This document shows, piece after piece, positions 1 to 63,789 of a stretch of DNA of 64,000 bases. This DNA is from Haplodiscus bocki (lineage: Eukaryota). The notes under the pieces were generated by a model. That model worked only from the letters and a program-made list of their open reading frames with translations, was not told the origin of the DNA and ran no database searches. Where the stretch lies: NCBI GenBank assembly GCA_965655095.1, contig OZ296651.1:45880001-45944000 (forward strand), in the 5' to 3' direction. Within the stretch, counting starts at the first letter, position 1. Each line of letters begins with the position of its first letter. Made by a program: the position numbers and the translations under genes.

Positions 1-3000
1 GTTGTTTTTACCATGTGCACTGTGCCGAGGACCATTGAGTTTTCTATCGCTTGGAACTCGTGACCTCTTATTGTTCGATGGGCGACTCCCTAAACAAATT
101 CACTGCTTTAATAAGTCAGTTACCCGCCTGGCGCCAAGTTGTCAAAAGTATTGTGGTTAGTCGTGCACCCAACGCGTTCCTCGTTGTTCCGGTTTAGTTT
201 CTTCCCTGTCGTGATTTTAAACTCCGAATGCATTTAGAAGGGAATATCTGACAATATACTGGCGAGATCTTTAGTTCACACCCAGGAACACCGGTAATAT
301 CAAATTGGTAAAAAAAATCTATTTCTGGGGAGGAACTCACTTACAAATTGCTTGTTTCTTAAACAGGTTCGGTGGTAGTGCCGACAGTTTTCCCTGTCAG
401 AATTTTGAACATCGATCTTACCCATACAAAATTTATTTCAGTGTTGAAATTAAGACGGCCTAAACCATAATCGCAGTACTTTAGTTCAAATAGACAATAC
501 AGATAGAAAAGTTTTACAAGAAGTACAGATTAACGCAAAACTGATGAATTCTGCTTAAAGTCTGAAAATCACTTTTTGGCATGTGTAGATAAGTTTTTGG
601 AAACCAATAACCCCGTTAACGTGATTTGAAATTGACAAAGTGAGGCATAAGTCTCAACGGAGTCAAAAGCTACGTTTTTCATTCTCTTCAACTGAAATTT
701 TTCGCTTCATAAGCGTCACATTGTACATAGTGAATGTGTATGGGCAGCCGAGCTTTTTTATGTTGTTAGGTATCCAAAAAGTCTCCACCAAACGAAAATA
801 CGGCCAGTTAGTGTACGAAAAACATGAAAAACTGTTTTGAATCAACTCACTTTTCTTGGGCGGAAAGATTACAAAGTTCTGAAAGCTTTCCCTAACTCTA
901 ATTAAAATGTCGCAAATAACTGTATTTTGCTTGACTGTGGCGATTATGAACGAATTGATGTTGTTCTCTATGGAAAATGTTTTCTCGCGTTTCATGCCAA
1001 ATTTCGAAAGTCCCAGATATTGCGGTAAAAGTTGGTCATCTTTTTCCAACGTTCTACATTCTTCTTTGGTCCTGATCCTTTTTTAAATTGTACTTCTGCA
1101 GCAAATAGGCCCTCTTACATAAAACCACCGAAACACGCATGAAAATCACTTTGCCTGAAAATCACATTTCAACCTTATTTACTGAATTCAGAATATAATT
1201 GGTCAAGGTCAGGTTATCTTTGAGCTGCGTTATCTGACTCATTTCTTTCGTCGGGTTTTGAACTATCCCTGATCATCCTTCTGTTTATCTATTTTTGTGG
1301 ATGAATTTGGACCTGTGCTAGAAACTGCTAAAACTTGGAAAATAGGCCAACGTATTGAGCCATTAATCTCGGCTTTTCTGAATCGTTTCGTTCCTCCGAG
1401 CCAACGATGGTAGCTTTTTCTGTGAATTCCTTACCCTCTGCAAGGCATCTTGTTTTCAATAGTTCCCTGGTTTTTTCTTCCTGCTCAACTAGGCCAATAT
1501 TTAGACTGAAGTTTTCAACTGTTTTTCTGTTCAATGAAAGTCCATAGAATAAATTTCTATCCGAAGGCGTTTTTCCAGATAACTGAAGGCCCCGCACTTT
1601 CGAGAAACGCGATTTCATTGGATGAGGTGTTGGACGCTTTAGAATACGCGCTGTACAAGTGACAGAGAGTAAAAATGCTGGATGTTATGCTGGTGCCGAA
1701 TTGCTGTCGACGAACAATGTTGGTACCGTCTATGGATTCAAAATGCTGTGGGAAAGACACAGTTGAATTTTTACAACAGTTGTAACAGGGCTTTTCAGTG
1801 CTGAAATAGTTTTTATACATCTTGAGGGTTGACAAAATTGAGACTAAAAATACATCTGGACACGGAACAGGGTCATCGCTTCCTTCACAAAATAAACATT
1901 GACCGGAAGCGGATAAGTCTCGCCAGCAATGACAACTGAAAACGCAGCGCATGGTGTATTTTTCATTAAAAGAATCCTTAATAATGCCAAAGGAGGCCAC
2001 TGTTTTAGTGGACCTTTGAGAAAAACTTGAAAATTGAGCCTACTAGAAATGATTTAAGTCTTTTTTTTTACCTATGTTTGTTTAAAGTACCACGATCATC
2101 GATTCCCTCGAAATTGTGTTTCTCACTCAATATTTTGTATCTGTGATCGGATATCGCCTTTTCAAAACTTTGCAATTCCTTTTTTCGAAGTATGCGTGGG
2201 ATCTGATGTCATTTCGCGGGTTCCAAACGTGCTGAGGTGCTCATGATCTCTCCCAACGATGAGTTTACTGCTCAATTCCGAACCGTCACGCAAGAAGTTG
2301 TTTTTACCATGTGCACTGTGCCGAGGACCATTGAGTTTTCTATCGCTTGGAACTCGTGACCTCTTATTGTTCGATGGGCGACTCCCTAAACAAATTCACT
2401 GCTTTAATAAGTCAGTTACCCGCCTGGCGCCAAGTTGTCAAAAGTATTGTGGTTAGTCGTGCACCCAACGCGTTCCTCGTTGTTCCGGTTTAGTTTCTTC
2501 CCTGTCGTGATTTTAAACTCCGAATGCATTTAGAAGGGAATATCTGACAATATACTGGCGAGATCTTTAGTTCACACCCAGGAACACCGGTAATATCAAA
2601 TTGGTAAAAAAAATCTATTTCTGGGGAGGAACTCACTTACAAATTGCTTGTTTCTTAAACAGGTTCGGTGGTAGTGCCGACAGTTTTCCCTGTCAGAATT
2701 TTGAACATCGATCTTACCCATACAAAATTTATTTCAGTGTTGAAATTAAGACGGCCTAAACCATAATCGCAGTACTTTAGTTCAAATAGACAATACAGAT
2801 AGAAAAGTTTTACAAGAAGTACAGATTAACGCAAAACTGATGAGTTTTGCTTAAAGTCTGACAATCACTTTTTGGCATGTGTAGATAAGTTTTTGGAAAC
2901 CAATAACCCCGTTAACGTGTTTTGAAATTGACAAAGTGAGGCATAAGTCTCAACGGAGTCAAAAGCTATGTTTTTCATTCACTTCAACTGAAATTTGTCG

Positions 3001-6000
3001 CTTCATAAGCGTCACATTGTACATAGTGAAGGTGTATGGGCAGCCGAGCTTTTTAATGTTGTTAGGTATCCAAAAAGTCTCCACCAAACGAAAATACGGC
3101 CAGTTAGTGTACGAAAAACATGAAAAACTGTTTTGAATCAACTCACTTTTCTTGGGCGGAAAGATTACAAAGTTCTGAAAGTTTTCCCTAACTCTAATTA
3201 AAATGTCGCAAATTACTGTATTTTGCTTGACTGTGGCGATTATGAACGAATTGATGTTGTTTTCTATGGAAAATGCTTTTTCGCGTTTCATGCCAATTTT
3301 CGAAAGTCCCAGATATTGCGGTAAAAGTTGGTCATCTTTTTTTTCCAACGTTCTACATTCTTCTTTGGTCCTGATCCTTTTTTGAGCTGTATTTCTGCAG
3401 CAAATAGGCCCTCTTACGTAAAACCACCGAAACACGCATGAAAATCACTTTGCCTGAAAATCACATTTCAACCTTATTTACTGAATTCAGAATATAATTG
3501 GTCAAGGTCAGGTTATCTTTGAGCTGCGTTATCTGACTCATTTCTTTTGTCGGGTTTTGAACTATCCCTGATCATCCTCCTGTTTATCTATTTTTGTGGA
3601 TGAAATTGGACCTGTGCTAAAAACTGCTAAAACTTGGAAAGTAGGCCAACGTATTGAGCCCTTAATCTAGGCTTTTCTGAATCGTTTCGTTCCTCTGAGC
3701 CAACGATGGTGGCTGTTTCTGTGAATTCCTTTCCCTCTGCAAAGCATCTTGTTTTCAATTGTTCCTGGTTTTTTTCCCTGCTCAACTAGGCCAATTCTTA
3801 GACTGAAGTTTTCAACTGATTCCTACTGTTTTCCGTTCAATGAAAGTCCATGGAAAAAATTTTTGTCCGAAGGCGTTTTTCCAGATAACCGATGGCACCG
3901 CACTTTTGAGAAACGCGATTTCATTGGATGAGGAGTTGGACGCTTTAGGATACGCGCTGTACAAGTGACAAAGAGTAATAATGCTGGATGTTATGCTGGT
4001 GCCGAATTCCTGTCGACAAACATTCTTGGTACCGTCTTTGGATTCAAAATGCAGTGAGGAAGATACAGTTGATCTTTTACAACATAAAATAAAACAGTGC
4101 TAATTTAGTTGCTACATCTTGGGCGATGACAAAGTTGAGACTAAAAATACATCTGGACACGGAACAGGGTCATCGCATCCTGCACGCAATGAACATTGAC
4201 CGGAAGCGCATAAATCTCGCAAGCAATAACAACTGCAAACGAAGCGCTTGCCTTATTGTTGATTAAAAGAATCCTTAATAATGCCAAAGGAGGCCACTTT
4301 CGTAGTTGACCTTTTAGAAAAACTTGAAGTTTGAGCCTACTAGAGATGATTTTAGCTTTTTTTGAGGTTTACCTATATGTGTTTCAAGTACCAGGATCAT
4401 CGATTTCTCACTCAATTTTTTGTATCTTTGATCGGATATATCTTTTCAAAACTTTACATTGCCTTTGGTCCGAGTTTGCATGGGATTTGATCTCATTTGG
4501 AGAGTTCCGAACCTGCTCAGGTGCTCTTGATCTCTCCCAACGATGAGTTTACTGCTCAATTTCGAACCGTCACGCTAGAAGTTGTTTTTACCATGTGCAC
4601 TGTGCCGAGGACCATTGAGTTTTCTATCGCTTGGAACTCGTGACCTCTTATTGTTCGATGGGCGACTCCCTAAACAAATTCACTGCTTTAATAAGTCAGT
4701 TACCCGCCTGGCGCCAAGTTGTCAAAAGTATTGTGGTTAGTCGTGCACCCAACGCGTTCTTCGTTGTTCCGGTTTAGTTTCTTCCCTGTCGTGATTTTAA
4801 ACTCCGAATGCATTTAGAAGGGAATATCTGACAATATACTGGCGAGATCTTTAGTTCACACCCAGGAACACCGGTAATATCAAATTGGTAAAAAAAAATC
4901 TATTTCTGGGGAGGAACTCACTTACAAATTGCTTGTTTCTTAAACAGGTTCGGTGGTAGTGCCGATTGTTTTCCCTGTCAGAATTTTGAACATCGATCTT
5001 ACGCATACAAAATTTATTTCAGTGTTGAAATTAAGACGGCCTAAACCATAATCGCAGTACTTTAGTTCAAATAGACAATACAGATAGAAAAGTTTTACAA
5101 GAAGTACAGATTAACGCAAAACTGATGAGTTTTGCTTAAAGTCTGACAATCACTTTTTGGCATGTGTAGATAAGTTTTTGGAAACCAATAACCCCGTTAA
5201 CGTGTTTTGAAATTGACAAAGTGAGGCATAAGTCTCAACGGAGTCAAAAGCTATGTTTTTCATTCACTTCAACTGAAATTTGTCGCTTCATAAGCGTCAC
5301 ATTGTACATAGTGAAGGTGTATGGGCAGCCGAGCTTTTTAATGTTGTTAGGTATCCAAAAAGTCTCCACCAAACGAAAATACGGCCAGTTAGTGTACGAA
5401 AAACATGAAAAACTGTTTTGAATCAACTCACTTTTCTTGGGCGGAAAGATTACAAAGTTCTGAAAGTTTTCCCTAACTCTAATTAAAATGTCGCAAATTA
5501 CTGTATTTTGCTTGACTGTGGCGATTATGAACGAATTGATGTTGTTTTCTATGGAAAATGCTTTTTCGCGTTTCATGCCAATTTTCGAAAGTCCCAGATA
5601 TTGCGGTAAAAGTTGGTCATCTTTTTTTTCCAACGTTCTACATTCTTCTTTGGTCCTGATCCTTTTTTAAGCTGTACTTCTGCAGCAAATAGGCCCTCTT
5701 ACGTAAAACCACCGAAACACGCATGAAAATCACTTTGCCTGAAAATCACATTTCAACCTTATTTACTGAATTCAGAATATAATTGGTCAAGGTCAGGTTA
5801 TCTTTGAGCTGCGTTATCTGACTCATTTCTTTTGTCGGGTTTTGAACTATCCCTGATCATCCTCCTGTTTATCTATTTTTGTGGATGAAATTGGACCTGT
5901 GCTAAAAACTGCTAAAACTTGGAAAGTAGGCCAACGTATTGAGCCCTTAATCTAGGCTTTTCTGAATCGTTTCGTTCCTCTGAGCCAACGATGGTGGCTG

Positions 6001-9000
6001 TTTCTGTGAATTCCTTTCCCTCTGCAAAGCATCTTGTTTTCAATTGTTCCTGGTTTTTTTCCCTGCTCAACTAGGCCAATTCTTAGACTGAAGTTTTCAA
6101 CTGATTCCTACTGTTTTCCGTTCAATGAAAGTCCATGGAAAAAATTTTTGTCCGAAGGCGTTTTTCCAGATAACCGATGGCACCGCACTTTTGAGAAACG
6201 CGATTTCATTGGATGAGGAGTTGGACGCTTTAGGATACGCGCTGTACAAGTGACAAAGAGTAATAATGCTGGATGTTATGCTGGTGCCGAATTCCTGTCG
6301 ACAAACATTCTTGGTACCGTCTTTGGATTCAAAATGCAGTGAGGAAGATACAGTTGATCTTTTACAACATAAAATAAAACAGTGCTAATTTAGTTGCTAC
6401 ATCTTGGGGGATGACAAAGTTGAGACTAAAAATACATCTGGACACGGAACAGGGTCATCGCATCCTGCACGCAATGAACATTGACCGGAAGCGCATAAAT
6501 CTCGCAAGCAATAACAACTGCAAACGAAGCGCTTGCCTTATTGTTGATTAAAAGAATCCTTAATAATGCCAAAGGAGGCCACTTTCGTAGTTGACCTTTT
6601 AGAAAAACTTGAAGTTTGAGCCTACTAGAGATGATTTTAGCTTTTTTTGAGGTTTACCTATATGTGTTTCAAGTACCAGGATCATCGATTTCTCACTCAA
6701 TTTTTTGTATCTTTGATCGGATATATCTTTTCAAAACTTTACATTGCCTTTGGTCCGAGTTTGCATGGGATTTGATCTCATTTGGAGAGTTCCGAACCTG
6801 CTCAGGTGCTCTTGATCTCCCCCAACGATGAGTTTACTGCTCAATTTCGAACCGTCACGCTAGAAGTTGTTTATACCATGTGCACTGTGCCGAGGACCAT
6901 TGAGTTTTCTATCGCTTTAAACTCGCGATCATTTATTGTTCGATGGGCGACTCCCTAAACAAATTCACTACCTTAGAAAGTCAGTTACCGGCTTGGCGCC
7001 AAGATGTCAAAAGTATTGTGGTTAGTCGTGCACCCAACGCGTTCTTCGTTGTTCCGGTTTAGTTTCTTCCCTGTCGTGATTTTAAACTCCGAATGTATTT
7101 AGAAGGGAATATCTGACAATATACTGGCGAGATCTTTAGTTCACACCCAGGAACACCGGTAATATCAAATTGGTAAAAAAAAATCTATTTCTGGGGAGGA
7201 ACTCACTTACAAATTGCTTGTTTCTTAAACAGGTTCGGTGGTAGTGCCGACAGTTTTCCCTGTCAGAATTTTGAACATCGATCTTACCCATACAAAATTT
7301 ATTTCAGTGTTGAAATTAAGACGACCGAAACCATAATCGCAGTACTTTAGTTCAAATAGACAATACAGATAGAAAAGTTTTACAAGAAGTACAGATTAAC
7401 GCAAAACTGATGAGTTTTGCTTAAAGTCTGAAAATCACTTTTTGGCATGTGTAGATAAGTTTTTGGAAACCAATAACCCCGGTAACGTGTTTTGAAATTG
7501 ACAAAGTGAGGCATAAGTCTCAACGGAGTGAAAAGCTATGTTTTTCATTCACTTCAACTGAAGTTTGTCGCTGCATAAGGGTCACATTGTACATAGTGAA
7601 CGTGTATGGGCAGCCGAGCTTTTTAATGTTGTTAGGTATCCAAAAAGTCTCCACCAAACGAAAATAGGGCCAGTTAGTGTACGAAAAACATGAAAAACTG
7701 TTTTGAATCAACTCACTTTTCTTGGGCGGAAAGATTACAAAGTTCTGAAAGTTTTCCCTAACTCTAATTAAAATGTCGCAAATAACTGTATTTTGCTTGA
7801 CTGTGGCGATTATGAACGAATTGATGTTGTTTTCTATGGAAAATGCTTTTTCGCGTTTCATGCCAATTTTCGAAAGTCCCAGTTATTGCGGTAAAAGTTG
7901 GTCATCTCTTTTTTCCAACGTTCTACATTCTTCTTTGGTCCTGATCCTTTTTTAACCTGTACTTCTGCAGCAAATAGGCCCTCTTACGTAAAACCACCGA
8001 AACACGCATGAAAATCACTTTGCCTGAAAATCACATTTCAACCTTATTTACTGAATTCAGAATATAATTGGTCAAGGTCAGGTTATCTTTGAGCTGCGTT
8101 ATCTGACTCATTTCTTTTGTCGGGTTTTGAACTATCTCTGATCATCCTTCTGTTTATCTATTTTTGTGGATGAAATTGGACCTGTGCTAAAAACTGCTGA
8201 AAGTTGGAATTTGGGCAACGTATTGAGCCCTTAATCTAGGCTTTTCTGAATCGTTTCGTTCCTCTGAGCCAACGATGGTGGCTGTTTCTGTGAATTCCTT
8301 TCCCTCTGCAAAGCATCTTGTTTTCAATTGTTCCTGGTTTTTTTCCCTGCTCAACTAGGCCAATTCTTAGACTGAAGTTTTCAACTGATTCCTACTGTTT
8401 TCCGTTCAATGAAAGTCCATGGAAAAAATTTTTGTCCGAAGGCGTTTTTCCAGATAACCGATGGCACCGCACTTTTGAGAAACGCGATTTCATTGGATGA
8501 GGAGTTGGACGCTTTAGGATACGCGCTGTACAAGTGACAAAGAGTAATAATGCTGGATGTTATGCTGGTGCCGAATTCCTGTCGACAAACAATCTTGGTA
8601 CCGTCTTTGGATTCAAAATGCAGTGAGGAAGATACAGTTGATCTTTTACAACATAAAATAAAACAGTGCTAATTTAGTTGCTACATCTTGGGGGATGACA
8701 AAGTTGAGACTAAAAATACATCTGGACACGGAACAGGGTCATCGCATCCTGCACGCAATGAACATTGACCGGAAGCGCATAAATCTCGCAAGCAATAACA
8801 ACTGCAAACGAAGCGCTTGCGTTATTGTTGATTAAAAGAATCCTTAATAATGCCAAAGGAGGCCACTTTTGTAGTTGACCTTTTAGAAAAACTTGAAGTT
8901 TGAGCCTACTAGAGATGATTTTAGCTTTTTTTGAGGTTTACCTATATGTGTTTCAAGTACCAGGATCATCGATTTCTCACTCAATTTTTTGTATCTTTGA

Positions 9001-12000
9001 TCGGATATATCTTTTCAAAACTTTACATTGCCTTTGGTCCGAGTATGCATGGGATTTGATCTCATTTGGAGAGTTCCGAACCTGCTCAGGTGCTCTTGAT
9101 CTCTCCCAACGATGAGTTTACTGCTCAATTTCGAACCGTCACGCTAAAAGTTGTTTATACCATGTGCACTGTGCCGAGGACCATTGAGTTTTCTATCGCT
9201 TTAAACTCGCGATCATTTATTGTTCGATGGGCGACTCCCTAAACAAATTCACTACCTTAGAAAGTCAGTTACCGGCTTGGCGCCAAGATGTCAAAAGTAT
9301 TGTGGTTAGTCGTGCACCCAACGCGTTCTTCGTTGTTCCGGTTTAGTTTCTTCCCTGTCGTGATTTTAAACTCCGAATGTATTTAGAAGGGAATATCTGA
9401 CAATATACTGGCGAGATCTTTAGTTCACACCCAGGAACACCGGTAATATCAAATTGGTAAAAAAAATCTATTTCTGGGGAGGAACTCACTTACAAATTGC
9501 TTGTTTCTTAAACAGGTTCGGTGGTAGTGCCGACTGTTTTCCCTGTCAGAATTTTGAACATCGATCTTACGCATACAAAATTTATTTCAGTGTTGAAATT
9601 AAGACGGCCTAAACCATAATCGCAGTACTTTAATTCAAATAGACAATACAGATAGAAAAGTTTTACAAGAAGTACAGATTAACGCAAAACTGATGAGTTT
9701 TGCTTAAAGTCTGAAAATCACTTTTTGGCATGTGTAGATAAGTTTTTGGAAACCAATAACCCCGGTAACGTGTTTTGAAATTGACAAAGTGAGGCATAAG
9801 TCTCAACGGAGTGAAAAGCTATGTTTTTCATTCACTTCAACTGAAGTTTGTCGCTGCATAAGCGTCACATTGTACATAGTGAACGTGTATGGGCAGCCGA
9901 GCATTTTAATGTTGTTAGGTATCCAAAAAGTCTCCACCAAACGAAAATACGGCCAGTTAGTGTACGAAAAACATGAAAAACTGTTTTGAATCAACTCACT
10001 TTTCTTGGGCGGAAAGATTACAAAGTTCTGAAAGTTTTCCCTAACTCTAATTAAAATGTCGCAAATAACTGTATTTTGCTTGACTGTGGCGATTATGAAC
10101 GAATTGATGTTGTTTTCTATGGAAAATGCTTTTTCGCGTTTCATGCCAATTTTCGAAAGTCCCAGTTATTGCGGTAAAAGTTGGTCATCTTTTTTTTCCA
10201 ACGTTCTACATTCTTCTTTGGTCCTGATCCTTTTTTAAATTGTACTTCTGCAGCAAATAGGCCCTCTTACATAAAACCACCGAAACACGCATGAAAATCA
10301 CTTTGCCTGAAAATCACATTTCAACCTTATTTACTGAATTCAGAATATAATTGGTCAAGGTCAGGTTATCTTTGAGCTGCGTTATCTGACTCATTTCTTT
10401 CGTCGGGTTTTGAACTATCCCTGATCATCCTTCTGTTTATCTATTTTTGTGGATGAATTTGGACCTGTGCTAGAAACTGCTAAAACTTGGAAAGTAGGCC
10501 AACGTGTTGAGCCCTTAATCTAGGCTTTTCTGAATCGTTTCGTTCCTCTGAGCCAACGATGGTGGCTGTTTCTGTGAATTCCTTTCCCTCTGCAAAGCAT
10601 CTTGTTTTCAATTGTTCCTGGTTTTTTTCCCTGCTCAACTAGGCCAATTCTTAGACTGAAGTTTTCAACTGATTCCTACTGTTTTCCGTTCAATGAAAGT
10701 CCATGGAAAAAATTTTTGTCCGAAGGCGTTTTTCCAGATAACCGATGGCACCGCACTTTTGAGAAACGCGATTTCATTGGATGAGGAGTTGGACGCTTTA
10801 GGATACGCGCTGTACAAGTGACAAAGAGTAATAATGCTGGATGTTATGCTGGTGCCGAATTCCTGTCGACAAACATTCTTGGTACCGTCTTTGGATTCAA
10901 AATGCAGTGAGGAAGATACAGTTGATCTTTTACAACATAAAATAAAACAGTGCTAATTTAGTTGCTACATCTTGGGGGATGACAAAGTTGAGACTAAAAA
11001 TACATCTGGACACGGAACAGGGTCATCGCATCCTGCACGCAATGAACATTGACCGGAAGCGCATAAATCTCGCAAGCAATAACAACTGCAAACGAAGCGC
11101 TTGCGTTATTGTTGATTAAAAGAATCCTTAATAATGCCAAAGGAGGCCACTTTTGTAGTTGACCTTTTAGAAAAACTTGAAGTTTGAGCCTACTAGAGAT
11201 GATTTTAGCTTTTTTTGAGGTTTACCTATATGTGTTTCAAGTACCAGGATCATCGATTTCTCACTCAATTTTTTGTATCTTTGATCGGATATATCTTTTC
11301 AAAACTTTACATTGCCTTTGGTCCGAGTATGCATGGGATTTGATCTCATTTGGAGAGTTCCGAACCTGCTCAGGTGCTCTTGATCTCTCCCAACGATGAG
11401 TTTACTGCTCAATTTCGAACCGTCACGCTAGAAGTTGTTTATACCATGTGCACTGTGCCGAGGACCATTGAGTTTTCTATCGCTTTAAACTCGCGATCAT
11501 TTATTGTTCGATGGGCGACTCCCTAAACAAATTCACTACCTTAGAAAGTCAGTTACCGGCTTGGCGCCAAGATGTCAAAAGTATTGTGGTTAGTCGTGCA
11601 CCCAACGCGTTCTTCGTTGTTCCGGTTTAGTTTCTTCCCTGTCGTGATTTTAAACTCCGAATGTTTTTAGAAGGGAATATCTGACAATATACTGGCGAGA
11701 TCTTTAGTTCACACCCAGGAACACCGGTAATATCAAATTGGTAAAAAAAATCTATTTCTGGGGAGGAACTCACTTACAAATTGCTTGTTTCTTAAACAGG
11801 TTCGGTGGTAGTGCCGACTGTTTTCCCTGTCAGAATTTTGAACATCGATCTTACGCATACAAAATTTATTTCAGTGTTGAAATTAAGACGGCCTAAACCA
11901 TAATCGCAGTACTTTAGTTCAAATAGACAATACAGATAGAAAAGTTTTACAAGAAGTACAGATTAACGCAAAACTGATGAGTTTTGCTTAAAGTCTGAAA

Positions 12001-41200: not shown

Positions 41201-44200
41201 CGAATTGATGATTTTCCTTATGAAAAATGCTCTTTCGTAGACTTTTAAACCAAAACTCGAAAGTCCCAGATTTTGTGACAAAAGTTGGTGATCATTTTTC
41301 CGACGTTCTCCATTCTTCTTTGGTCCTGATCCTTTTTAATCTGTACTTTTGCAGCAAATAGGAGCTCTTACGTGAAACCACCGCGACACGCTTGAAAATC
41401 ACATTGCTTCAAGATCATTCTCGACTGTATTTACAAAATAAAGAATTTCCTTGGTCAAGGTCAGGTTGTCGCAGACCTGCGTTATCTGACTCATTTCTCT
41501 CGTCTGGTTTTGTACTCTCCCTGATCATGCTTCTGTTTATCCATTTGTGTGGATGAGATTGGACCTGTGCTAAAACTGCTGAAACTTGGAAAAAAGGCCA
41601 ACATATTGAGCCATTAATCTAGGCTTTTCTGAATCGTTTCGTTCCTCTGAGCCCACATTGGTGTGTGTTTGTGTTATTTTCTTTCCCTCTGCAAAGCATC
41701 TTGTTTCAACTGTTCCCTGGTTTCTTTGTCCTGCTCAACAAGGCCAATATATAGACTGAATTATTCAACTGATTCCTACTGTTTTCCGTTCAATGAAAGT
41801 CGATAGAATAAATTTTGGTCCGAAGGCGTTTTTCCAGATAACTAATGGCCACGCAATTTTGAGAAGCGCGTTTTTTTGGATGACGAGTTGAACGCTTTGG
41901 AATACGCGCTGTACAATGGAGAGAGTAATCATGCTGGATATTATGCTGATGCCGAATTGCTGTCGCGAACAATGTTGGTATTGTCTATGTATTGAAAATG
42001 CATTGAGGAAGATACAGTTGAATTTTTACAACAATTGTAACAGGGATTTTCACTGCTAAAATAGTTATTACATCTTGGGGGATGACAAAGTTGAGACTAA
42101 AATTACATCTGGACACGGAACAGGGTCATCGCATCCTTCACACAATAAACAACGACCGGAAGCGGATAAGTCTCCGGAGGAATAACTGGGAACGCAGCGC
42201 ATGCCCTATTTTCGATCGAAAGAATCCTTAATAATGCCAAGTGAGGCCACTTTCGTAGTGGACCTTTTAGAAAAACTTGAAGTTTGAGCCTACTAGAAAT
42301 GATTTTAGCTTTTTTTGAGGTTTACCTTTGTGTGTTTCAAGTACCAGGATCATCGATTTCTCACTCAATTTTTTGTATCTTTGATCGGATATATCCTTTC
42401 AAAACTTTCCATTGCCTTTGGTCCGAGTATGCATGAGATTTGATCTCATTTCGAGAGTTCCGAACCTGCTCAGGTGCTCTTGATCTCTCCCAACGATGAG
42501 TTTACTGCTCAATTTCGAACCGTCACGCTAGAAGTTGTTTATACCATGTGCACTGTGCCGAGGACCATTGAGTTTTCTATCGCTTTAAACTCGCGATCAT
42601 TTATTGTTCGATGGGTGACTCCCTAAACAAATTCACTACCTTAGAAAGTCAGTTACCGGCTTGGCGCCAAGATGTCAAAAGTATTGCGGTTAGTCGTTCA
42701 CCCAACGCATTCTTCGTTGTTCCGGTTTAGTTTCTTCCGTGTTGTGATTTTAAACTTCGAATGTCTTTATAAGGAAATGTCTCACAATATACTGGGGAGA
42801 TCTTTAGCTCACACCCCAGGAACAGAAGTATTATCAAATTGTCAAAAAACCTATTTCTGGGGAGGAACTCGCTTAAAATTTGTATTTTAAACTGGTTTGC
42901 TAGTAGTGCTGACTGTTTTCCCTGTCAGGAGTTTGAACGTCGAATTTTTTGAGGGATTGTCTGGTAATATACTGTGGAGACCTTCAGCTTTCACGCTAGG
43001 AGCACAGATATTAACCGACGAGTAGGCAAACGGTCAATGTTGGGCGCCATTTTGTTTTGAAATGAAACTGTGTAGACGTGCGTGTAGTTGATACTTACAC
43101 ATGCAGATTTTGCTCCAGTTGTGGAATCAAGACGGCTGAAACCCTAATGGTAGTACTTTAGTTCACATAGACAATACAAATATGACGTAAGGAAAGTTTT
43201 ACGAAAATCATAGAGAAACGCAAAACTGAGGAATTTTGCTCAACGTCTGAAAATCACCTTTTGGTAAATGTGTAATTAAATCGTTGACAACCATTGACTC
43301 CGGTAACGTGATCTGAAATTGAAAAAGTGAGTCATAAGTCTCAGCGGAGTCAAAAGTTTTGTTTTTCATTCACTTAAACTGGAATTTGTCGATTCTTAGG
43401 CGTCACATTGTACATAGTGAACGTGTATGGGCAGCCGAATTTTTCAATGCTGTTGTTAGGTGTCCATAAAGTCTCCACCAAACGGAAATAAGGCCAGTTA
43501 GTGTATGAAAAACATGAAAAACTGTTTTGAATCAACCTAATTTTCGAAGCCAAAGAAATTAGAGTTTTGAAAGTTTTCCCTAACTCTATCACACTGTCGC
43601 AAATAACTGTTTTGCTGGAATGTTGCGATTATGAACGAATTGATGATTTTCCTTATGAAAAATGCTCTTTCGTAGACTTTTAAACCAAAACTCGAAAGTC
43701 CCAGATTTTGTGACAAAAGTTGGTGATCATTTTTCCCACGTTCTCCATTCTTCTTTGGTCCTGATCCTTTTTAATCTGTACTTTTGCAGCAAATAGGAGC
43801 TCTTACGTGAAACCACCGCGACACGCTTGAAAATCACATTGCTTCAAGATCATTCTCGACTGTATTTACAAAATAAAGAATTTCCTTGGTCAAGGTCAGG
43901 TTGTCGCAGACCTGCGTTATCTGACTCATTTCTCTCGTCTGGTTTTGTACTCTCCCTGATCATGCTTCTGTTTATCCATTTGTGTGGATGAGATTGGACC
44001 TGTGCTAAAACTGCTGAAACTTGGAAAAAAGGACAACATATTGAGCCATTAATCTAGGCTTATCTGAATCGTTTCGTTCCTCTGAGCCCACATTGGTGTG
44101 TGTTTGTGTTATTTTCTTTCCCTCTGCAAAGCATCTTGTTTCAACTGTTCCCTGGTTTCTTCGTCCTGCTCAACAAGGCCAATATATAGACTGAATTATT

Positions 44201-47200
44201 CAACTGATTCCTACTGTTTTCCGTTCAATGAAAGTCGATAGAATAAATTTTGGTCCGAAGGCGTTTTTCCAGATAACTAATGGCCACGCAATTTTGAGAA
44301 GCGCGTTTTTTTGGATGACGAGTTGAACGCTTTGGAATACGCGCTGTACAATGGAGAGAGTAATCATGCTGGATATTATGCTGATGCCGAATTGCTGTCG
44401 CGAACAATGTTGGTATTGTCTATGTATTGAAAATCCATTGAGGAAGATACACTTGAATTTTTACAACAATTGTAACGAGGCTTTTCACTGCTAAAATAGT
44501 TATTACATCTTGGGGGATGACAAAGTTGAGACTAAAATTACATCTGGACACGGAACAGTGTCATCGCATCCTTCACACAATAAACAATGACCGGAAGCGG
44601 ATAATTCTCCGGAGGAATAACTGGAAACGCAGCGCATGCCCTATTTTCGATCGAAAGAATCCTTAATAATGCCAAGTGAGGCCACTTTCGTAGTGGACCT
44701 TTTAGAAAAACTTGAAGTTTGAGCCTACTAGAAATGATTTTAGCTTTTTTTTTGAGGTTTACCTTTGTGTGTTTCAAGTACCAGGATCATCGATTTCTCA
44801 CTCAATTTTTTGTATCTTTGATCGGATATTTCTTTTCAAAACTTTCCATTGCCTTTGGTCCGAGTATGCATGGGATTTGATCTCATTTCGAGAGTTCCGA
44901 ACCTGCTCAGGTGCTCTTGATCTCTCCCAACGATGAGTTTACTGCTCAATTTCGAACCGTCACGCTAGAAGTTGTTTATACCATGTGCACTGTGCCGAGG
45001 ACCATTGAGTTTTCTATCGCTTTAAACTCGCGATCATTTATTGTTCGATGGGCGACTCCCTAAACAAATTCACTACCTTAGAAAGTCAGTTACCGGCTTG
45101 GCGCCAAGACGTCAAAAGTATTGTGGTTAGTCGTTCACCCAACGCATTCTTCGTTGTTCCGGTTTAGTTTCTTCCGTGTTGTGATTTTAAACTTCGAATG
45201 TCTTTATAAGGAAATGTCTCACAATATACTGGGGAGATCTTTAGCTCACACCCCAGGAACAGAAGTATTATCAAGTTGTCAAAAAACCTATTTCTGGGGA
45301 GGAACTCGCTCAAAATTTGTATTTTAAACTGGTTTGCTAGTAGTGCTGACTGTTTTCCCTGTCAGGAGTTTGAACGTCGAATTTTTTGAGGGATTGTCTG
45401 GTAATATACTGTGGAGACCTTCAGCTTTCACGCTAGGAGCACAGATATTAACCGACGAGTAGGCAAACGGTCAATGTTGGGCGCCATTTTGTTTTGAAAT
45501 GAAACTGTGTAGACGTGCGTGTAGTTGATACTTACACATGCAGATTTTGCTCCAGTTGTGGAATCAAGACGGCTTAAACCCTAATGGTAGTACTTTAGTT
45601 CACATAGACAATACAAATATGACGTAAGGAAAGTTCTAACGAAAATCATAGAGAAACGCAAAACTGAGTAATTTTGCTCAACGTCTGAAAATCACCTTTT
45701 GGCAAATGTGTAATTAAATCGTTGACAACCATTGACTCCGGTAACGTGATCTGAAATTGAAAAAGTGAGTCATAAGTCTCAGCGGAGTCAAAAGTTTTGT
45801 TTTTCATTCACTTAAACTGGAATTTGTCGATTCTTAGGCGTCACATTGTACATAGTGAACGTGTATGGGCAGCCGAATTTTTCAATGCTGTTGTTAGGTG
45901 TCCATAAAGTCTCCACCAAACGGAAATAAGGCCAGTTAGTGTATGAAAAACATGAAAAACTGTTTTGAATCAACCTAATTTTCGAAGCCAAAGAAATTAG
46001 AGTTTTGAAAGTTTTCCCTAACTCTATCACACTGTCGCAAATAACTGTTTTGCTGGAATGTTGCGATTATGAACGAATTGATGATTTTCCTTATGAAAAA
46101 TGCTCTTTCATAGACTTTTAAACTAAAACTCGAAAGTCCCAGATTTTGTGACAAAAGTTGGTGATCATTTTTCCCACGTTCTCCATTCTTCTTTGGTCCT
46201 GATCCTTTTTAATCTGTACTTTTGCAGCAAATAGGAGCTCTTACGTGAAACCACCGCGACACGCTTGAAAATCACATTGCTTCAAGATCATTCTCGACTG
46301 TATTTACAAAATAAAGAATTTCCTTGGTCAAGGTCAGGTTGTCGCAGACCTGCGTTATCTGACTCATTTCTCTCGTCTGGTTTTGTACTCTCCCTGATCA
46401 TGCTTCTGTTTATCCATTTGTGTGGATGAGATTGGACCTGTGCTAAAACTGCTGAAACTTGGAAAAAAGGCCAACATATTGAGCCATTAATCTAGGCTTA
46501 TCTGAATCGTTTCGTTCCTCTGAGCCCACATTGGTGTGTGTTTGTGTTATTTTCTTTCCCTCTGCAAAGCATCTTGTTTCAACTGTTCCCTGGTTTCTTC
46601 GTCCTGCTCAACAAGGCCAATATATAGACTGAATTATTCAACTGATTCCTACTGTTTTCCGTTCAATGAAAGTCGATAGAATAAATTTTGGTCCGAAGGC
46701 GTTTTTCCAGATAACTAATGGCCACGCAATTTTGAGAAGCGCGTTTTTTTGGATGACGAGTTGAACGCTTTGGAATACGCGCTGTACAATGGAGAGAGTA
46801 ATCATGCTGGATATTATGCTGATGCCGAATTGCTGTCGCGAACAATGTTGGTATTGTCTATGTATTGAAAATCCATTGAGGAAGATACACTTGAATTTTT
46901 ACAACAATTGTAACGAGGCTTTTCACTGCTAAAATAGTTATTACATCTTGGGGGATGACAAAGTTGAGACTAAAATTACATCTGGACACGGAACAGTGTC
47001 ATCGCATCCTTCACACAATAAACAATGACCGGAAGCGGATAATTCTCCGGAGGAATAACTGGAAACGCAGCGCATGCCCTATTTTCGATCGAAAGAATCC
47101 TTAATAATGCCAAGTGAGGCCACTTTCGTAGTGGACCTTTTAGAAAAACTTGAAGTTTGAGCCTACTAGAAATGATTTTAGCTTTTTTTTTGAGGTTTAC

Positions 47201-50200
47201 CTTTGTGTGTTTCAAGTACCAGGATCATCGATTTCTCACTCAATTTTTTGTATCTTTGATCGGATATTTCTTTTCAAAACTTTCCATTGCCTTTGGTCCG
47301 AGTATGCATGGGATTTGATCTCATTTCGAGAGTTCCGAACCTGCTCAGGTGCTCTTGATCTCTCCCAACGATGAGTTTACTGCTCAATTTCGAACCGTCA
47401 CGCTAGAAGTTGTTTATACCATGTGCACTGTGCCGAGGACCATTGAGTTTTCTATCGGTTTAAACTCGCGATCATTTATTGTTCGATGGGCGACTCCCTA
47501 AACAAATTCACTACCTTAGAAAGTCAGTTACCGGCTTGGCGCCAAGATGTCAAAAGTATTGTGGTTAGTCGTTCACCCAACGCATTCTTCGTTGTTCCGG
47601 TTTAGTTTCTTCCGTGTTGTGATTTTAAACTTCGAATGTCTTTATAAGGAAATGTCTCACAATATACTGGGGAGATCTTTAGCTCACACCCCAGGAACAG
47701 AAGTATTATCAAGTTGTCAAAAAACCTATTTCTGGGGAGGAACTCGCTCAAAATTTGTATTTTAAACTGGTTTGCTAGTAGTGCTGACTGTTTTCCCTGT
47801 CAGGAGTTTGAACGTCGAATTTTTTGAGGGATTGTCTGGTAATATACTGTGGAGACCTTCAGCTTTCACGCTAGGAGCACAGATATTAACCGACGAGTAG
47901 GCAAACGGTCAATGTTGGGCGCCATTTTGTTTTGAAATGAAACTGTGTAGACGTGCGTGTAGTTGATACTTACACATGCAGATTTTGCTCCAGTTGTGGA
48001 ATCAAGACGGCTTAAACCCTAATGGTAGTACTTTAGTTCACATAGACAATACAAATATGACGTAAGGAAAGTTCTAACGAAAATCATAGAGAAACGCAAA
48101 ACTGAGTAATTTTGCTCAACGTCTGAAAATCACCTTTTGGCAAATGTGTAATTAAATCGTTGACAACCATTGACTCCGGTAACGTGATCTGAAATTGAAA
48201 AAGTGAGTCATAAGTCTCAGCGGAGTCAAAAGTTTTGTTTTTCATTCACTTAAAACTGGAATTTGTCGATTCTTAGGCGTCACATTGTACATAGTGAACG
48301 TGTATGGGCAGCCGAATTTTTCAATGCTGTTGTTAGGTGTCCATAAAGTCTCCACCAAACGGAAATAAGGCCAGTTAGTGTATGAAAAACATGAAAAACT
48401 GTTTTGAATCAACCTAATTTTCGAAGCCAAAGAAATTAGAGTTTTGAAAGTTTTCCCTAACTCTATCACACTGTCGCAAATAACTGTTTTGCTGGAATGT
48501 TGCGATTATGAACGAATTGATGATTTTCCTTATGAAAAATGCTCTTTCATAGACTTTTAAACTAAAACTCGAAAGTCCCAGATTTTGTGACAAAAGTTGG
48601 TGATCATTTTTCCCACGTTCTCCATTCTTCTTTGGTCCTGATCCTTTTTAATCTGTACTTTTGCAGCAAATAGGAGCTCTTACGTGAAACCACCGCGACA
48701 CGCTTGAAAATCACATTGCTTCAAGATCATTCTCGACTGTATTTACAAAATAAAGAATTTCCTTGGTCAAGGTCAGGTTGTCGCAGACCTGCGTTATCTG
48801 ACTCATTTCTCTCGTCTGGTTTTGTACTCTCCCTGATCATGCTTCTGTTTATCCATTTGTGTGGATGAGATTGGACCTGTGCTAAAACTGCTGAAACTTG
48901 GAAAAAAGGCCAACATATTGAGCCATTAATCTAGGCTTTTCTGAATCGTTTCGTTCCTCTGAGCCCACATTGGTGTGTGTTTGTGTTATTTTCTTTCCCT
49001 CTGCAAAGCATCTTGTTTCAACTGTTCCCTGGTTTCTTTGTCCTGCTCAACAAGGCCAATATATAGACTGAATTTTCCAACTGATTCCTACTGTTTTCCG
49101 TTAAATGAATGTCCATGGAATAAGTTTTGGTCCGAAGGTGTTTTTCCAGATAACTAATGGCCACGCAATTTTGAGAAGCGCGATTTTTTGGATGACGAGT
49201 TGAACGCTTTGGAATACGCGCTGTGCAATGGAGAGAGTAATCATGCTGGATATTATGCTAATGCCGAATTGCTGTCGCAAACAATGTTGGTATTGTCTAT
49301 GTATTGAAAATGCATTGAGGAAGATACAGTTGAATTTTTACAACAATTGTAACAGGGCTTTTCACTGCTAAAATAGTTATTACATCTTGGGGGATGACAA
49401 AGTTGAGACTAAAATTACATCTGGACACGGAACAGTGTCATCGCATCCTTCACACAATAAACAATGACCGGAAGCGGATAATTCTCCGGAGGAATAACTG
49501 GAAACGCAGCGCAGGCGCTATTTTCGATCGAAAGAATCCTTAATAATGCCAAGTGAGGCCACTTTCGTAGTGGACCTTTTAGAAAAACTTGAAGTTTGAG
49601 CCTACTAGAAATGATTTTAGCTTTTTTTTGAAGTTTACCTTTGTGTGTTTCAAGTACCAGGATCATCGATTTCTCACTCAATTTTTTGTATCTTTGATCG
49701 GATATTTCTTTTCAAAACTTTCCATTGCCTTTGGTCCGAGTATGCATGGGATTTGATCTCATTTCGAGAGTTCCGAACCTGCTCAGGTGCTCTTGATCTC
49801 TCCCAACGATGAGTGTACTGCTCAATTTCGAACCGTCACGCTAGAAGTTGTTTGTACCATGTGCACTGTGCCGAGGACCATTGAGTTTTCTATCGCTTTA
49901 AATTGGCGATCATTTATTGTTCGATGGGCGACTGCCTAAACAAATGCACTACCTTAGAAAGTCAGTTACCGGCTTGGCGCCAAGATGTCAAAAGTATTGT
50001 GGTTAGTCGTTCACCCAACGCATTCTTCGTTGTTCCGGTTTAGTTTCTTCCGTGTTGTGATTTTAAACTTCGAATGTCTTTATAAGGAAATGTCTCACAA
50101 TATACTGGGGAGATCTTTAGCTCACACCCCAGGAACAGAAGTATTATCAAATTGTCAAAAAACCTATTTCTGGGGAGGAACTCGCTTAAAATTTGTATTT

Positions 50201-50830
50201 TAAACTGGTTTGCTAGTAGTGCTGACTGTTTTCCCTGTCAGGAGTTTGAACGTCGAATTTTTTGAGGGATTGTCTGGTAATATACTGTGGAGACCTTCAG
50301 CTTTCACGCTAGGAGCACAGATATTAACCGACGAGTAGGCAAACGGTCAATGTTGGGCGCCATTTTGTTTTGAAATGAAACTGTGTAGACGTGCGTGTAG
50401 TTGATACTTACACATGCAGATTCTGCTCCAGTTGTGGAATCAAGACGGCTTAAACCCTAATGGTAGTACTTTAGTTCACATAGACAATACAAATATGACG
50501 TAAGGAAAGTTCTAACGAAAATCATAGAGAAACGCAAAACTGAGTAATTTTGCTCAACGTCTGAAAATCACCTTTTGGCAAATGTGTAATTAAATCGTTG
50601 ACAACCAATGACTCCGGTAACGTGATCTGAAATTGACAAATTGAGTCATAAGTCTCAGCGGAGTCAAAAGTTTGTTTTTCATTCACTTAAACTGGAATTT
50701 GTCGCTTCTTAGGCGTCACATTGTACATAGTGAACGTGTATGGGCAGCCGAATTTTTCAATGCTGTTGTTAGGTGTCCATAAAGTCTCCACCAAACGAAA
50801 ATAAGGCCAGTTAGTGTATGAAAAACATGA
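35234..50830. repeat. Macrosatellite subfamily B3 (homogeneous ~2437 bp units)
   Basis: Six full units of 2436-2438 bp sharing variants such as GTGTGTGTTTGTGTTATTTTC, CAAAATAAAGAATTTCC and TTTCTGGGGAGGAACTCGC. Confidence 0.92.
41880..42750 (+). mobile_element. Heavily decayed Ty3/Gypsy integrase-like relic inside the repeat unit (example copy; present in every unit)
   Basis: Frameshifted hand translation gives motifs in integrase order: HAGYY..Y*KC.EEDTVEF (41930-42030), GHRILHT..NNW..CQ (42121-42240), DF..GLP..KY..IID.FTQF (42301-42371), LISPNDEFTAQF (42483), FSIA..DG (42573-42615), THSS..FSFFRVV (42702-42746). These resemble HHCC, DF.tGLP..KY.lv.vD.ftK, SDNG.EF, FS.AYHPQ.DG and HSS.G.SPF.VV. 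Many stops and frameshifts; no HMM was run. Confidence 0.45.
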
Positions 50831-50949
50831 AAAACTGTTTTGAATCAACCTGTTTTTCGAAGTCGCAGAAATTAGAGTTTTGAAAGTTTTCCCTAACTCT
50901 ATTACACTGTCGCAAATACTGTGTTTTGCTTGAGTGTTGCGATTATGAA

Positions 50950-51560
50950 CGAATAAAAGATTTTCTGTATTAAAATGCTCTTTTGTGGCCTTTTATACCA
51001 AATTTCGAAATTCCCAGATTTTGCGGCAAAAGTTGGTCATCATTTTTTCCGACGTTCTACTTTCTTCTTTGGTCCTGATCGTTTTTTTTTTCTGTACTTT
51101 TGCAGCAAATAGGCGCTCTTACGTGAAAACACCGCGACACGCTAGAAAATCACATTGTTTGGAAATCACATATCGACCTTATTTACCAAATTCGGAATAT
51201 GATTGGTCAAGGTCAGGTTGTCGTAGACCTGCGTTATCTGACTCATTTCGCTCGTCAGGTTTTGTACTATCCCTGATCATCGTTTTGTTTATCCTATTGT
51301 GCGGGTGAAGTTGGACCTGTGCTAATAATTGCTAAACCTTGTAAAATAGGCCAACGTTTTAAGCCAATGTTCCAGGCTAATCCGAATTGGTTCCTTTTTT
51401 GAACCAACCTTGATGTCTACTTTTTTGATTCCTTTCCCACTGCAAGGAATGTTTTTTGCAACCACTTTCACGTTGTTCTTTCCCTTTCTTCCTTCTCAAC
51501 GAGGCAAATAGTTGGACTGCAGTTTCCTAATGATTCGTAGTGTATTCAGTTAGTTGAAAG
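50950..51560. repeat. Degenerate terminal partial unit (right array boundary)
   Basis: Similarity to the unit decays progressively (e.g. TTCCTTTCCCACTGCAAGG at ~51430, TGATTCGTAGTGTATTCAGTTAGTTGAAAGTC at ~51531) and is lost after ~51560. Confidence 0.85.
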
Positions 51561-52176
51561 TCGAATGATTTCCTGATGTACCATTGAATGTTACAGCAAT
51601 TAGTTAGATAGCATTTTTCTAGTAGGGAAGTGTTCAATACAACTGCTGCTGGAGCTATATAAAGAGAATAAAGTTTCATGCTGCAAACAAATGAAAAGGC
51701 GCCTATGCTTCAACAGTAGCCCGTCTTGGTGTCCAGAACATCCCTGAGAGACGTTTTGGTGACAGAATAGTTGATAGCTAATGTTTTTTGGAATATTTTA
51801 GGTGCGTTTCACGAAAACCTGTCGCTCAAGTTGTTGAGTTTTTAATTCTTGTACTAAAGCTGTAACCCAATGTGGCAGTGAAGTCTTGTGATAGGTTTTT
51901 TAGCTGAACATTAAAATAGGAGTTTCCGGCGAGCTTCCCTAATTTGAAATTTCGCCACTGAACCGTAGCATTTTTTTGGTTCGAAGTTTTTTTGGGTGGC
52001 TATAGAGGCAATGTATTGATGTATACGATTTCGTGTAGAGTATACGTCTTGTTTTTTGACACCATATACACATTTTGCTGCAAAAGTTAGTTTTGACTGA
52101 TAATGCTGGACTTTGAGCGAACTGCTCTTTTCTGCGATCAGAACTTCTCAAGAAAAAGAAAATATGCATTTTGAAG

Positions 52177-52328
52177 GTCTTCACCTCGATGAAAGAGGAA
52201 AAGTTTGAAAAACAAAGTTGCTGAGTTAGACGTCCTAAACTTGGCGAGCCCAAGAATAGCATGGTCGTTCCTGAAGAGCCTGTGATTCCAAAGTTCTCAA
52301 CTCGAAATCTTTCCGTCTCGCATACAAG
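52177..52328 (+). CDS. Possible upstream LARP1 exon (uncertain 5' boundary, in-frame TGA at 52222)
   Basis: The frame ...VRRPKLGEPKNSMVVPEEPVIPKFSTRNLSVSHT ends AG|GTTTAT at phase 2, compatible with the phase-2 acceptor at 52545. The best acceptor TTTTGAAG| at 52176 puts a TGA in frame. Confidence 0.3.
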
Positions 52329-52545
52329 GTTTATTTAACAACTTCCGTTGAAATCAATGCATTGTGTCTCAAAACATGAGTGTTCTCCCATCCGATAATT
52401 GTACCAATATCGTTACGCTATGCAGGAGAAAACATGTAGTAAAGTATGTTCAGTTGTTATACGTCCAAAACTCTTTGTCAACTTCTAAAGTTGACCTATA
52501 CACTACTGAAGTTGTGAGTGGAATTAAATATTTTGATTGTTACAG

Positions 52546-52834
52546 CTCAGCAAAATCAGAGATAAGGTCTGAGAGCGGCTGCTCTCAAAGTGATGATTTT
52601 GGAGACGCCGAAGTGAACAAACTGTTAATTGTGACGCAATCAAAACAAACTGCTCCAAAGTTATCTGCTGCTCAGCAACCGTCGTATGTGAAAAAACATA
52701 TGGGCTATGACCGCTCCAGTAGTGGCCAGTATCACTCGCGTGCGAAGGTCATGAGTGCATGGGCCGAAGTTATCAACGATGGGCTCTACTTCTACGAACA
52801 GAATCTCAGATCAGTGGATGATTATCATCACTAC
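52546..52834 (+). CDS. LARP1: Internal coding exon of a La-related protein 1 (LARP1) homolog
   Basis: Translates SAKSEIRSESGCSQSDDFGDAEVNKLLIVTQ...KKHMGYDRSSSGQYHSRAKVMSAWAEVINDGLYFYEQNL, matching the conserved LARP1 segment DD.DVNKILIVTQ...HPGGDRTG.HTSRAKMS.ELAKVINDGLFYYEQDL. Acceptor TTGTTACAG| ends at 52545 (phase 2) and donor |GTTAGT starts at 52835 (phase 0). The rest of ORF 52364-53074 is likely intronic read-through. Confidence 0.9.
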
Positions 52835-53066
52835 GTTAGTGACGTTTTCATTATCCGAGTTTTTCCATATACAGTGAAACGTCGCTTGTCCTCACTGATC
52901 GAGTGGTCAATGAGAGCGTCAATGAGAAGCATAAATATGCTGTTTTTCCGGATATTTAATCGCACATTGTTTATAAACTCGCTATTGCGCAGTCTAGTTT
53001 TTGCCATAGAGTGGAAAACTTTGTTTTATCGCCCACTTGGTTGTCGAGAAAACTGCATGAAACGGA

Positions 53067-53119
53067 CCAAGTGAACAATCTCCCCCCTAACTGCTGCCAG
53101 GGGGAGATAATTCACTAGG
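53067..53119. other. Imperfect inverted repeat / hairpin (~20 bp stem)
   Basis: CCAAGTGAACAATCTCCCCC ... GGGGGAGATAATTCACTAGG, 17 of 20 positions complementary. Confidence 0.7.
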
Positions 53120-58600: not shown

Positions 58601-58619
58601 TAACTGAGAAATCGATAAA

Positions 58620-63590: not shown

Positions 63591-63789
63591 GGTTTTTCCT
63601 TCGCTACGTTACTGAGAGGTTATCCATATTTTGTCATAGAATTTTCGAAAAACCAGTAGACTATCAATTTTGTGGATTTTTGGGGAAAATCGAAGAATTT
63701 GGCTGGCGAGATCAACTTTTCTTTAACCGATCGAGAGTTTAACTTAGGGATACGGAATTTGAGCGGAGCATTTCTGTGGGTTTTTAGTA

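What the first reader, a model, noticed from the sequence alone, without database searches (positions are those of the whole stretch)
1..52834. A >51-kb macrosatellite abutting, and probably inside an intron of, a LARP1 gene
Seen: the array ends ~1 kb upstream of an internal LARP1 exon that starts in phase 2. No La-motif exon (QIEYYFS-type) or start exon is visible between 51.6 and 52.5 kb. Established: this LARP1 segment lies C-terminal to the La motif. Inference: either the upstream exons lie beyond the array, making it a giant intronic, transcribed and copy-number-variable macrosatellite in a conserved translation regulator, or this LARP1 copy was truncated by the array.
Basis: partly seen in the sequence, partly recalled or inferred. 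Interest (0 to 1): 0.7.

Follow-up and report, generated by a model that had tools for sequence, protein, structure and literature searches.

The report
Giant repeat-filled intron in LARP1
A 104-kb block of about 43 head-to-tail copies of a 2.4-kb non-coding unit sits inside one intron of this animal's only LARP1 gene, making that intron 134 kb where a related species has 400 bp; this is a clear but ordinary case of repeat DNA enlarging an intron.

Summary
Window 1-51462 is the right half of a gap-free tandem array of about 103.7 kb (C4:45,827,750-45,931,462) built from a 2.28-2.46 kb unit. The array ends 1,083 bp before LARP1 exon 52546-52834.

The "giant intron" reading holds at the DNA level. 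The La-motif exon and a 173-bp acidic exon lie upstream of the array on the same strand. The DM15 exons lie downstream. The splice phases match, and LARP1 is single-copy in this genome.

In a related species the same two exons are 400 bp apart; here they are 134,239 bp apart. The flanking exons differ mostly at synonymous sites (57 versus 11 codons), so both halves of the gene are under purifying selection.

The unit has no protein, RNA-family or transposon match and occurs at no other locus. Its block-wise homogenisation fits unequal exchange. The intron also holds a young 20-kb LTR element.

Copy-number variation is only hinted at: a second assembly differs inside the array.

This scan had already noted many locus-specific macrosatellites elsewhere in this genome. 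I rate this a new member of a known kind, of modest interest.

The parts
1..51462 (.). Right half of the tandem array: about 21.8 units of 2.28-2.44 kb, head to tail. The whole array is C4:45,827,750-45,931,462, about 103.7 kb and about 43 units.
   Evidence: The units fall into locally homogenised blocks. The last unit is truncated at unit position 1961.
51463..52545 (+). Single-copy 3' tail of the giant intron (1,083 bp), ending in the acceptor ttgattgttacag.
   Evidence: unique in the genome. The same array-to-exon junction is present in a second assembly.
52546..52834 (+). LARP1 mid exon (289 bp). It takes 1 base to complete a codon and ends in phase 0.
   Evidence: Human LARP1 residues 637-690. 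85 of 96 residues are identical to the related species, with 46 synonymous codon differences. Single copy in the genome.
52835..60908 (+). Next LARP1 intron (8,074 bp; 565 bp in the related species). It contains a dispersed repeat of about 240 bp at 53060-53300.
60909..61241 (+). LARP1 exon (333 bp, phase 0 to phase 0) followed by a GC-AG intron (CAG|GCAAGT).
   Evidence: Alignment with the related species shows indels in multiples of 3, and the acceptor and GC donor are conserved.
61242..64000 (+). Start of the following LARP1 intron, with a conserved non-coding block at 61335-61399.
   Evidence: The next exons lie right of the window at C4:45,945,423 and onward. The DM15 exons are at 45,950,616 and 45,958,706.

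Best explanation
The array is a locus-specific, non-coding macrosatellite that arose and grew inside one intron of the genome's only LARP1 gene. That intron runs from C4:45,798,307 to 45,932,545, which is 134,239 bp; 77% of it is array, and it also holds a young 20-kb LTR retroelement and other dispersed repeats.

Growth was most likely by unequal exchange or replication slippage between neighbouring units. This inference rests on the block-wise homogenisation, a 3-unit higher-order repeat and the older, decayed copies at both edges.

The gene stays intact, and I infer that it is expressed as one long pre-mRNA from which the array is removed by ordinary cis-splicing between the donor AT|GTACGT and the acceptor at 52546. 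On this reading the array has no function of its own. Its main effect is a cost: about 134 kb of extra transcription per mRNA, roughly 35-65 minutes at the 2-4 kb/min usually quoted for RNA polymerase II (my own knowledge, not tested here).
For: - **Array anatomy:**
- **Exons on both sides, same strand:** the La motif is at C4:45,796,703 (Pfam La 67.7 bits; human LARP1 residues 412-571, E 6e-25). The LARP1_HEAT/DM15 exons occur only at C4:45,950,616 and 45,958,706. The mid exon is single-copy.
- **Splice phases fit:** the La exon ends in phase 0. The 173-bp acidic exon runs from phase 0 to phase 2. The mid exon needs 2 bases from the preceding exon.
- **Related-species contig L028:** it has the same exons in the same order, and the orthologous intron is 400 bp.
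- **Purifying selection on the flanking exons:** 57 synonymous versus 11 non-synonymous codon differences.
- **Unit is non-coding and locus-specific:** no Pfam match, no Rfam match, no similarity to the neighbouring retroelement's pol, no real internal repeats, and no other locus in 1.5 Gb apart from a 270-bp module in a satellite on C5.
Against:
- The left array junction is seen in one assembly only.
- A second assembly differs inside the array, so the exact size is uncertain.
- Sense-strand poly(A) signals are not depleted in the units (61 versus 55), so the sequence itself shows no sign of selection for read-through.
Confidence: 0.82

Rival explanations
1. The array has split LARP1 into two transcription units. 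The upstream part (N-terminus, La module, acidic exon) ends before or inside the array. The downstream part (mid region plus DM15) is expressed from a promoter in or after the array. If earlier notes are right that this is an acoel worm, a spliced leader could be joined at the 52546 acceptor. The product would be a LARP1 lacking the La module, starting at the in-frame Met in KKHMGYDR.
For: About 30% of genes in the acoel S. roscoffensis are SL trans-spliced (PMC9911081). Earlier notes of this scan call this genome an acoel; I did not check that.
Against: The donor and acceptor phases of the two flanking exons are still matched and conserved with the related species. The mid exon has no start-codon context at its acceptor. 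The 1,083-bp spacer is not conserved and has no recognisable first exon. Both halves are under purifying selection, as expected for one essential protein.
Confidence: 0.07
2. Assembly artefact: the array is misplaced in this intron, or its length is substantially wrong through collapse or expansion of near-identical units.
For: - In a second assembly (ERZ26859043, ctg87704) the last three full units are all of the type of the reference's last full unit (m31), whereas the reference has three units that differ by 1-2%.
- That contig has about 146 kb on the array side, yet the La ORF is recorded only on another contig.
- The youngest block is 98-99% identical between units, which makes it hard to assemble.
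Against: - There are no N gaps.
- Units differ by 1-16% in an orderly block pattern that HiFi-type reads can resolve.
- The right junction (array, unique spacer, exon) is reproduced in the second assembly, with only 0.12% difference in the unique part.
- The left flank is reproduced at 99.97% up to C4:45,807,707.
- The unit occurs nowhere else, so it has no other place to belong.
Confidence: 0.06
3. The array is functional. It could act as a built-in transcriptional delay on LARP1, as a regulatory or insulator block, or as a source of repeat-derived non-coding or small RNAs.
For: Only circumstantial. It is tolerated in an essential single-copy gene. Consensus 5' splice-site hexamers are fewer on the sense strand than on the antisense strand (19 versus 60 over 32 non-independent copies).
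Against: The related species manages with a 400-bp intron. Units drift up to 16% apart with indel variants. No conserved ORF, RNA family or structure was found. This genome has many comparable arrays at unrelated loci.
Confidence: 0.05

Closest known systems
Satellite-DNA-containing gigantic introns of the Drosophila Y-linked fertility genes kl-3 and kl-5 (Fingerhut, Moran & Yamashita 2019, PMC6508621)
   Same: A tandem repeat array lies inside an intron of an intact protein-coding gene and makes up most of the locus. In those genes the repeats are transcribed together with the exons and then spliced out.
   Different: In Drosophila the repeats are megabases of simple 5-10-bp satellites in testis-specific Y-linked genes, with dedicated RNA-binding proteins. 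Here the repeat is 104 kb of a complex 2.4-kb unit in an autosomal-type, single-copy housekeeping translation regulator, and transcription is untested.
Locus-specific macrosatellites (D4Z4/DXZ4-type arrays of kb-sized units)
   Same: The unit is kb-sized, arranged head to tail at a single locus over about a hundred kb, with local homogenisation and higher-order repeats.
   Different: The classical examples are mostly intergenic or carry a gene in each unit. This unit has no ORF or RNA match and lies wholly within an intron. Its polymorphism is not shown.
Other macrosatellites noted by this scan in the same genome (hAT-, LINE-, SET-gene- and tRNA-derived arrays)
   Same: Same genome, similar sizes (40-90 kb), each at one locus, and each interpreted as growing by unequal exchange.
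   Different: Those units derive from a recognisable transposon or gene fragment. This unit has no recognisable source, and it interrupts a conserved gene's intron.

Membership tests
LARP1 (La-related protein 1) gene | La motif | tested here: met
   Pfam PF05383 scores 67.7 bits at C4:45,796,703-855. Human LARP1 residues 412-492 match with E 6e-25.
LARP1 (La-related protein 1) gene | C-terminal DM15 / LARP1_HEAT region | tested here: met
   PF21071 scores 115 and 85 bits at C4:45,958,706 and 45,950,616, on the + strand. These are the only hits in the genome.
LARP1 (La-related protein 1) gene | Conserved mid-region motif (…SRAK…VINDGL.FYEQ.L) between the La module and DM15 | tested here: met
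   Window 52547-52834 matches human LARP1 residues 637-690.
LARP1 (La-related protein 1) gene | One continuous reading frame across the array-bearing intron | tested here: met
   The splice phases match (AT|GT … AG|C gives ATC) and are identical in the related species. The joined protein was deliberately not built or searched.
Macrosatellite | Head-to-tail array of units of 1 kb or more, spanning tens to hundreds of kb | tested here: met
   About 43 units of 2.28-3.13 kb over 103.7 kb.
Macrosatellite | Copy-number polymorphism between individuals or haplotypes | tested here: inconclusive
   A second assembly differs in unit make-up at the right end and in contig geometry. Assembler error is not excluded, and no reads were available.
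Satellite-containing gigantic intron (Drosophila Y type) | Repeat array lies within an intron of an intact gene | tested here: met
Satellite-containing gigantic intron (Drosophila Y type) | Array is co-transcribed with the exons and spliced out | not testable with these tools
Satellite-containing gigantic intron (Drosophila Y type) | Megabase-scale simple-sequence satellites | tested here: not met
   The unit is 2.4 kb of complex sequence and the intron is 134 kb.
   Ten open stretches gave no Pfam hit. tblastn of the neighbouring element's 1592-aa pol against all units gave E >= 0.05. Frames broken by stops were not read through.

The most novel reading that the evidence does not exclude
The giant array-filled intron is not passive. 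One possibility is that it works as a copy-number-tunable transcriptional delay on the sole LARP1 gene. Another is that its far-downstream acceptor at 52546 is also used for spliced-leader trans-splicing of transcripts that start in or after the array, giving a La-less, DM15-only LARP1 isoform.
Probability: 0.07. Interest if true: 0.6.

Novelty: new member of a known kind. Interest (0 to 1): 0.33.

Why it matters
This is a clean, datable example of a single intron of an essential, single-copy translation regulator growing about 335-fold (400 bp to 134 kb), mainly through one locus-specific macrosatellite, while the coding sequence stays under purifying selection.

It gives a natural test case for three questions: how an animal with mostly short introns transcribes and splices across a long repeat, whether copy number varies and affects LARP1 output, and how macrosatellites arise from sequence that is not a transposon. 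None of this challenges current understanding.

Tried and rejected
- **TRF:** blind to this array because the period exceeds 500 bp. I used k-mer offsets and BLAST instead.
- **Rfam:** no match at the gathering threshold over the window, and none at the E-value threshold on 60.7-61.6 kb.
- **Pfam on ten open stretches of a unit:** nothing. The phage DNA search also found nothing.
not supported.
- **Internal reiteration of the unit:** only chance-level repeats.
two in-frame stops in the frame that leads to the 52328 donor. A 52226/52230-52328 exon would need phase 1 or 2, which does not fit the phase-0 La donor. It is not conserved in the related species. The real intermediate exon is C4:45,798,134-306.
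- **Walking along the second assembly's contigs with the look-up of encoding contigs:** failed. That collection's gene calls read TGA as a sense codon and choose their start codons unpredictably. Proteins read through a stop were not submitted.
- **Similarity between the relative's 400-bp intron and any part of this intron:** none, because neutral sites are saturated.
- **CpG depletion as a mark of germline methylation or transcription:** uninformative. Observed/expected is 0.8-1.1 everywhere.
- **Poly(A)-signal strand bias:** none.
- **Spliced protein:** not assembled or searched as a whole. Exons were searched one by one by reference.
- **Large representative-protein search, structure prediction and fold search:** not needed.

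Full report
**Where the window lies.** The window is G000:C4:45,880,001-45,944,000, + strand, in a 1.5-Gb animal genome. Earlier notes of this scan call the animal an acoel worm. I did not check that.

**The array.** K-mer offsets peak at 2438/2437 and 2284/2285 bp. Repeated 20-mers cover 85-100% of each 2-kb bin from 2 to 50 kb and 0% after 52 kb. BLAST of one unit (30001-32438) shows about 22 head-to-tail copies, all in + orientation, from 1 to 51462. TRF reported nothing because its longest period is 500 bp.

I fetched 100 kb to the left of the window. The array continues to C4:45,828,346 by direct similarity. It reaches about 45,827,750 once the 0.5-kb flank that recurs inside the older composite units is counted. 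The total is about 103.7 kb and about 43 units, with no N.
- The left 27 kb holds rearranged variants of 3.13 kb and other sizes.
- The remaining 76 kb holds 31.8 regular units.
- An all-against-all identity matrix of those units shows four locally homogenised blocks: units 1-9, units 10-17 (a 2.28-kb deletion variant), units 18-25 (with a 3-unit, 7.18-kb higher-order repeat), and units 26-31 (98-99% identical).
- Identity falls to 84-86% between distant blocks.
- The truncated last unit is the most diverged of its block, and the leftmost copies are only 70-74% like the reference unit.

This is the classical signature of growth and turnover by unequal exchange.

**What the unit is.**
- It has no Rfam family.
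- It has no Pfam match in its ten longest open stretches.
- It shows no similarity to the pol of the retroelement in the same intron (E >= 0.05).
- It has no real internal direct or inverted repeats.
- It occurs nowhere else in the genome. The one exception is a 270-bp module (unit positions 275-537) shared at 65-70% with a satellite of about 660 bp at C5:68.07 Mb.

**The gene.**
- *Mid exon.* The exon at 52546-52834 has the acceptor ttacag|C and the donor TAC|GTTAGT. It aligns to human LARP1 residues 637-690.
- *DM15.* Family searches of the whole genome place the LARP1_HEAT/DM15 region only at C4:45,950,616 and 45,958,706, on the + strand.
- *La motif.* A La motif lies at C4:45,796,703, on the + strand. 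It aligns to human LARP1 residues 412-571.
- *Copy number.* The mid exon is single-copy, so there is one LARP1 gene and its parts lie on both sides of the array.

**The comparative test.** A word search with the La exon found a 78%-identical ORF on a 293-kb ENA contig of a related species (locus L028). Aligning L028 to the 194-kb region gives 14 conserved blocks in the same order. These include the La exon, an exon encoding …DVEELEFMFDEEMAAPPKINTFSAN, and then the window's mid exon.

Fine alignment and phase bookkeeping give the following model.
- La exon: C4:45,796,702-45,797,476, with a phase-0 donor CAG|GTAC conserved in both species.
- Acidic exon: 45,798,134-45,798,306, 173 bp, phase 0 to phase 2, donor AT|GTACGT.
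- Mid exon: window 52546, which supplies the third base of the split codon (ATC).
- In the related species these last two exons are 400 bp apart. Here they are 134,239 bp apart.

The two flanking exons differ from the relative by 57 synonymous and 11 non-synonymous codons. Both sides are therefore under purifying selection.

A further coding exon lies at window 60909-61241, followed by a conserved GC-AG intron.

I did not build or search the joined protein.

**Content of the intron.**
- 567 bp of unique sequence.
- A 20-kb LTR retroelement at 45,798,874-45,818,919, with gag and pol frames and LTRs 99.6% identical over 1.9 kb, so it is young.
- 8.8 kb of dispersed repeats.
- The array, which makes up 77% of the intron.
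- 1,083 bp of unique sequence.

**Second assembly (ENA ERZ26859043).**
- Contig ctg79093 matches the La side at 99.97% over 20.9 kb.
- Contig ctg87704 (338 kb) carries the array-spacer-exon junction. Its unique part differs from the reference by 0.12%.
- Its last three full units are all of the type of the reference's last full unit (m31), whereas the reference has three distinguishable units there.
- About 146 kb of that contig lies on the array side, yet the La ORF is recorded only on the other contig.
- This hints at a longer or differently arranged array on another haplotype, or at assembler error. I could not decide between these.

**What is not shown.** Transcription of the array and splicing across it are therefore inferences. 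Sequence proxies were uninformative: the strand bias of poly(A) signals and CpG depletion.

**Comparison with what is known.** The closest described system is the set of satellite-filled gigantic introns in the Drosophila Y-linked genes kl-3 and kl-5 (PMC6508621). The present case differs in unit type, scale and kind of gene. The scan had already recorded many locus-specific macrosatellites in this genome.

**Verdict.** I rate it a new member of a known kind, of modest interest.

**Handling of restricted material.** No human contig was met, no N was filled, and no consensus of the retroelement was built.

Noticed in passing
C4:45,798,874-45,818,919 (left of the window; loci L010-L012): A young LTR retroelement of about 20 kb sits in the same LARP1 intron, only 567 bp after the donor. 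Its LTRs are 2.4-2.5 kb and 99.6% identical over 1.9 kb. It has an open stretch of 489 aa and a pol-like stretch of 1592 aa.
   Followed up: partly
window 61236-61247: The intron after exon 60909-61241 uses a GC donor (CAG|GCAAGT). The donor is conserved in the related species.
   Followed up: partly
window 61335-61399 and C4:45,947,972-45,948,060 (L019:3972-4060): Two short intronic blocks are about 80% conserved with the related species but show no coding signature and no Rfam match. They could be splicing regulatory elements, micro-exons or small RNAs.
   Followed up: partly
window 53060-53300: A dispersed repeat of about 240 bp, with 40 or more copies at 79-84% identity on many chromosomes. 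It is SINE- or MITE-like.
   Followed up: no
C5:68,068,000-68,078,000 (L033): Another tandem repeat, with a unit of about 650-670 bp and higher-order periods of 1342 and 1983 bp. It shares a 270-bp module (65-70% identity) with positions 275-537 of the LARP1 array unit.
   Followed up: partly
window 20521-37312 (units 20-25 of the matrix): A three-unit higher-order repeat of about 7.18 kb. Units three apart are 97-99% identical (99% for two of the three pairs), while neighbours are 93-97% identical. Units of 2.30 kb and 2.44 kb are interspersed: units 20 and 23 are 2.30 kb and the rest 2.44 kb.
   Followed up: yes
L028, L029, L032 (ENA contigs): The ORF calls stored for these eukaryotic contigs read TGA as tryptophan and run through introns. 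Proteins P0001 and P0121 are therefore artefactual read-throughs, not gene models.
   Followed up: yes
C4:45,780,001-45,974,000: CpG observed/expected is about 0.8-1.1 in exons, introns, array and flanks alike. There is no sign of germline CpG depletion in this gene body.
   Followed up: partly
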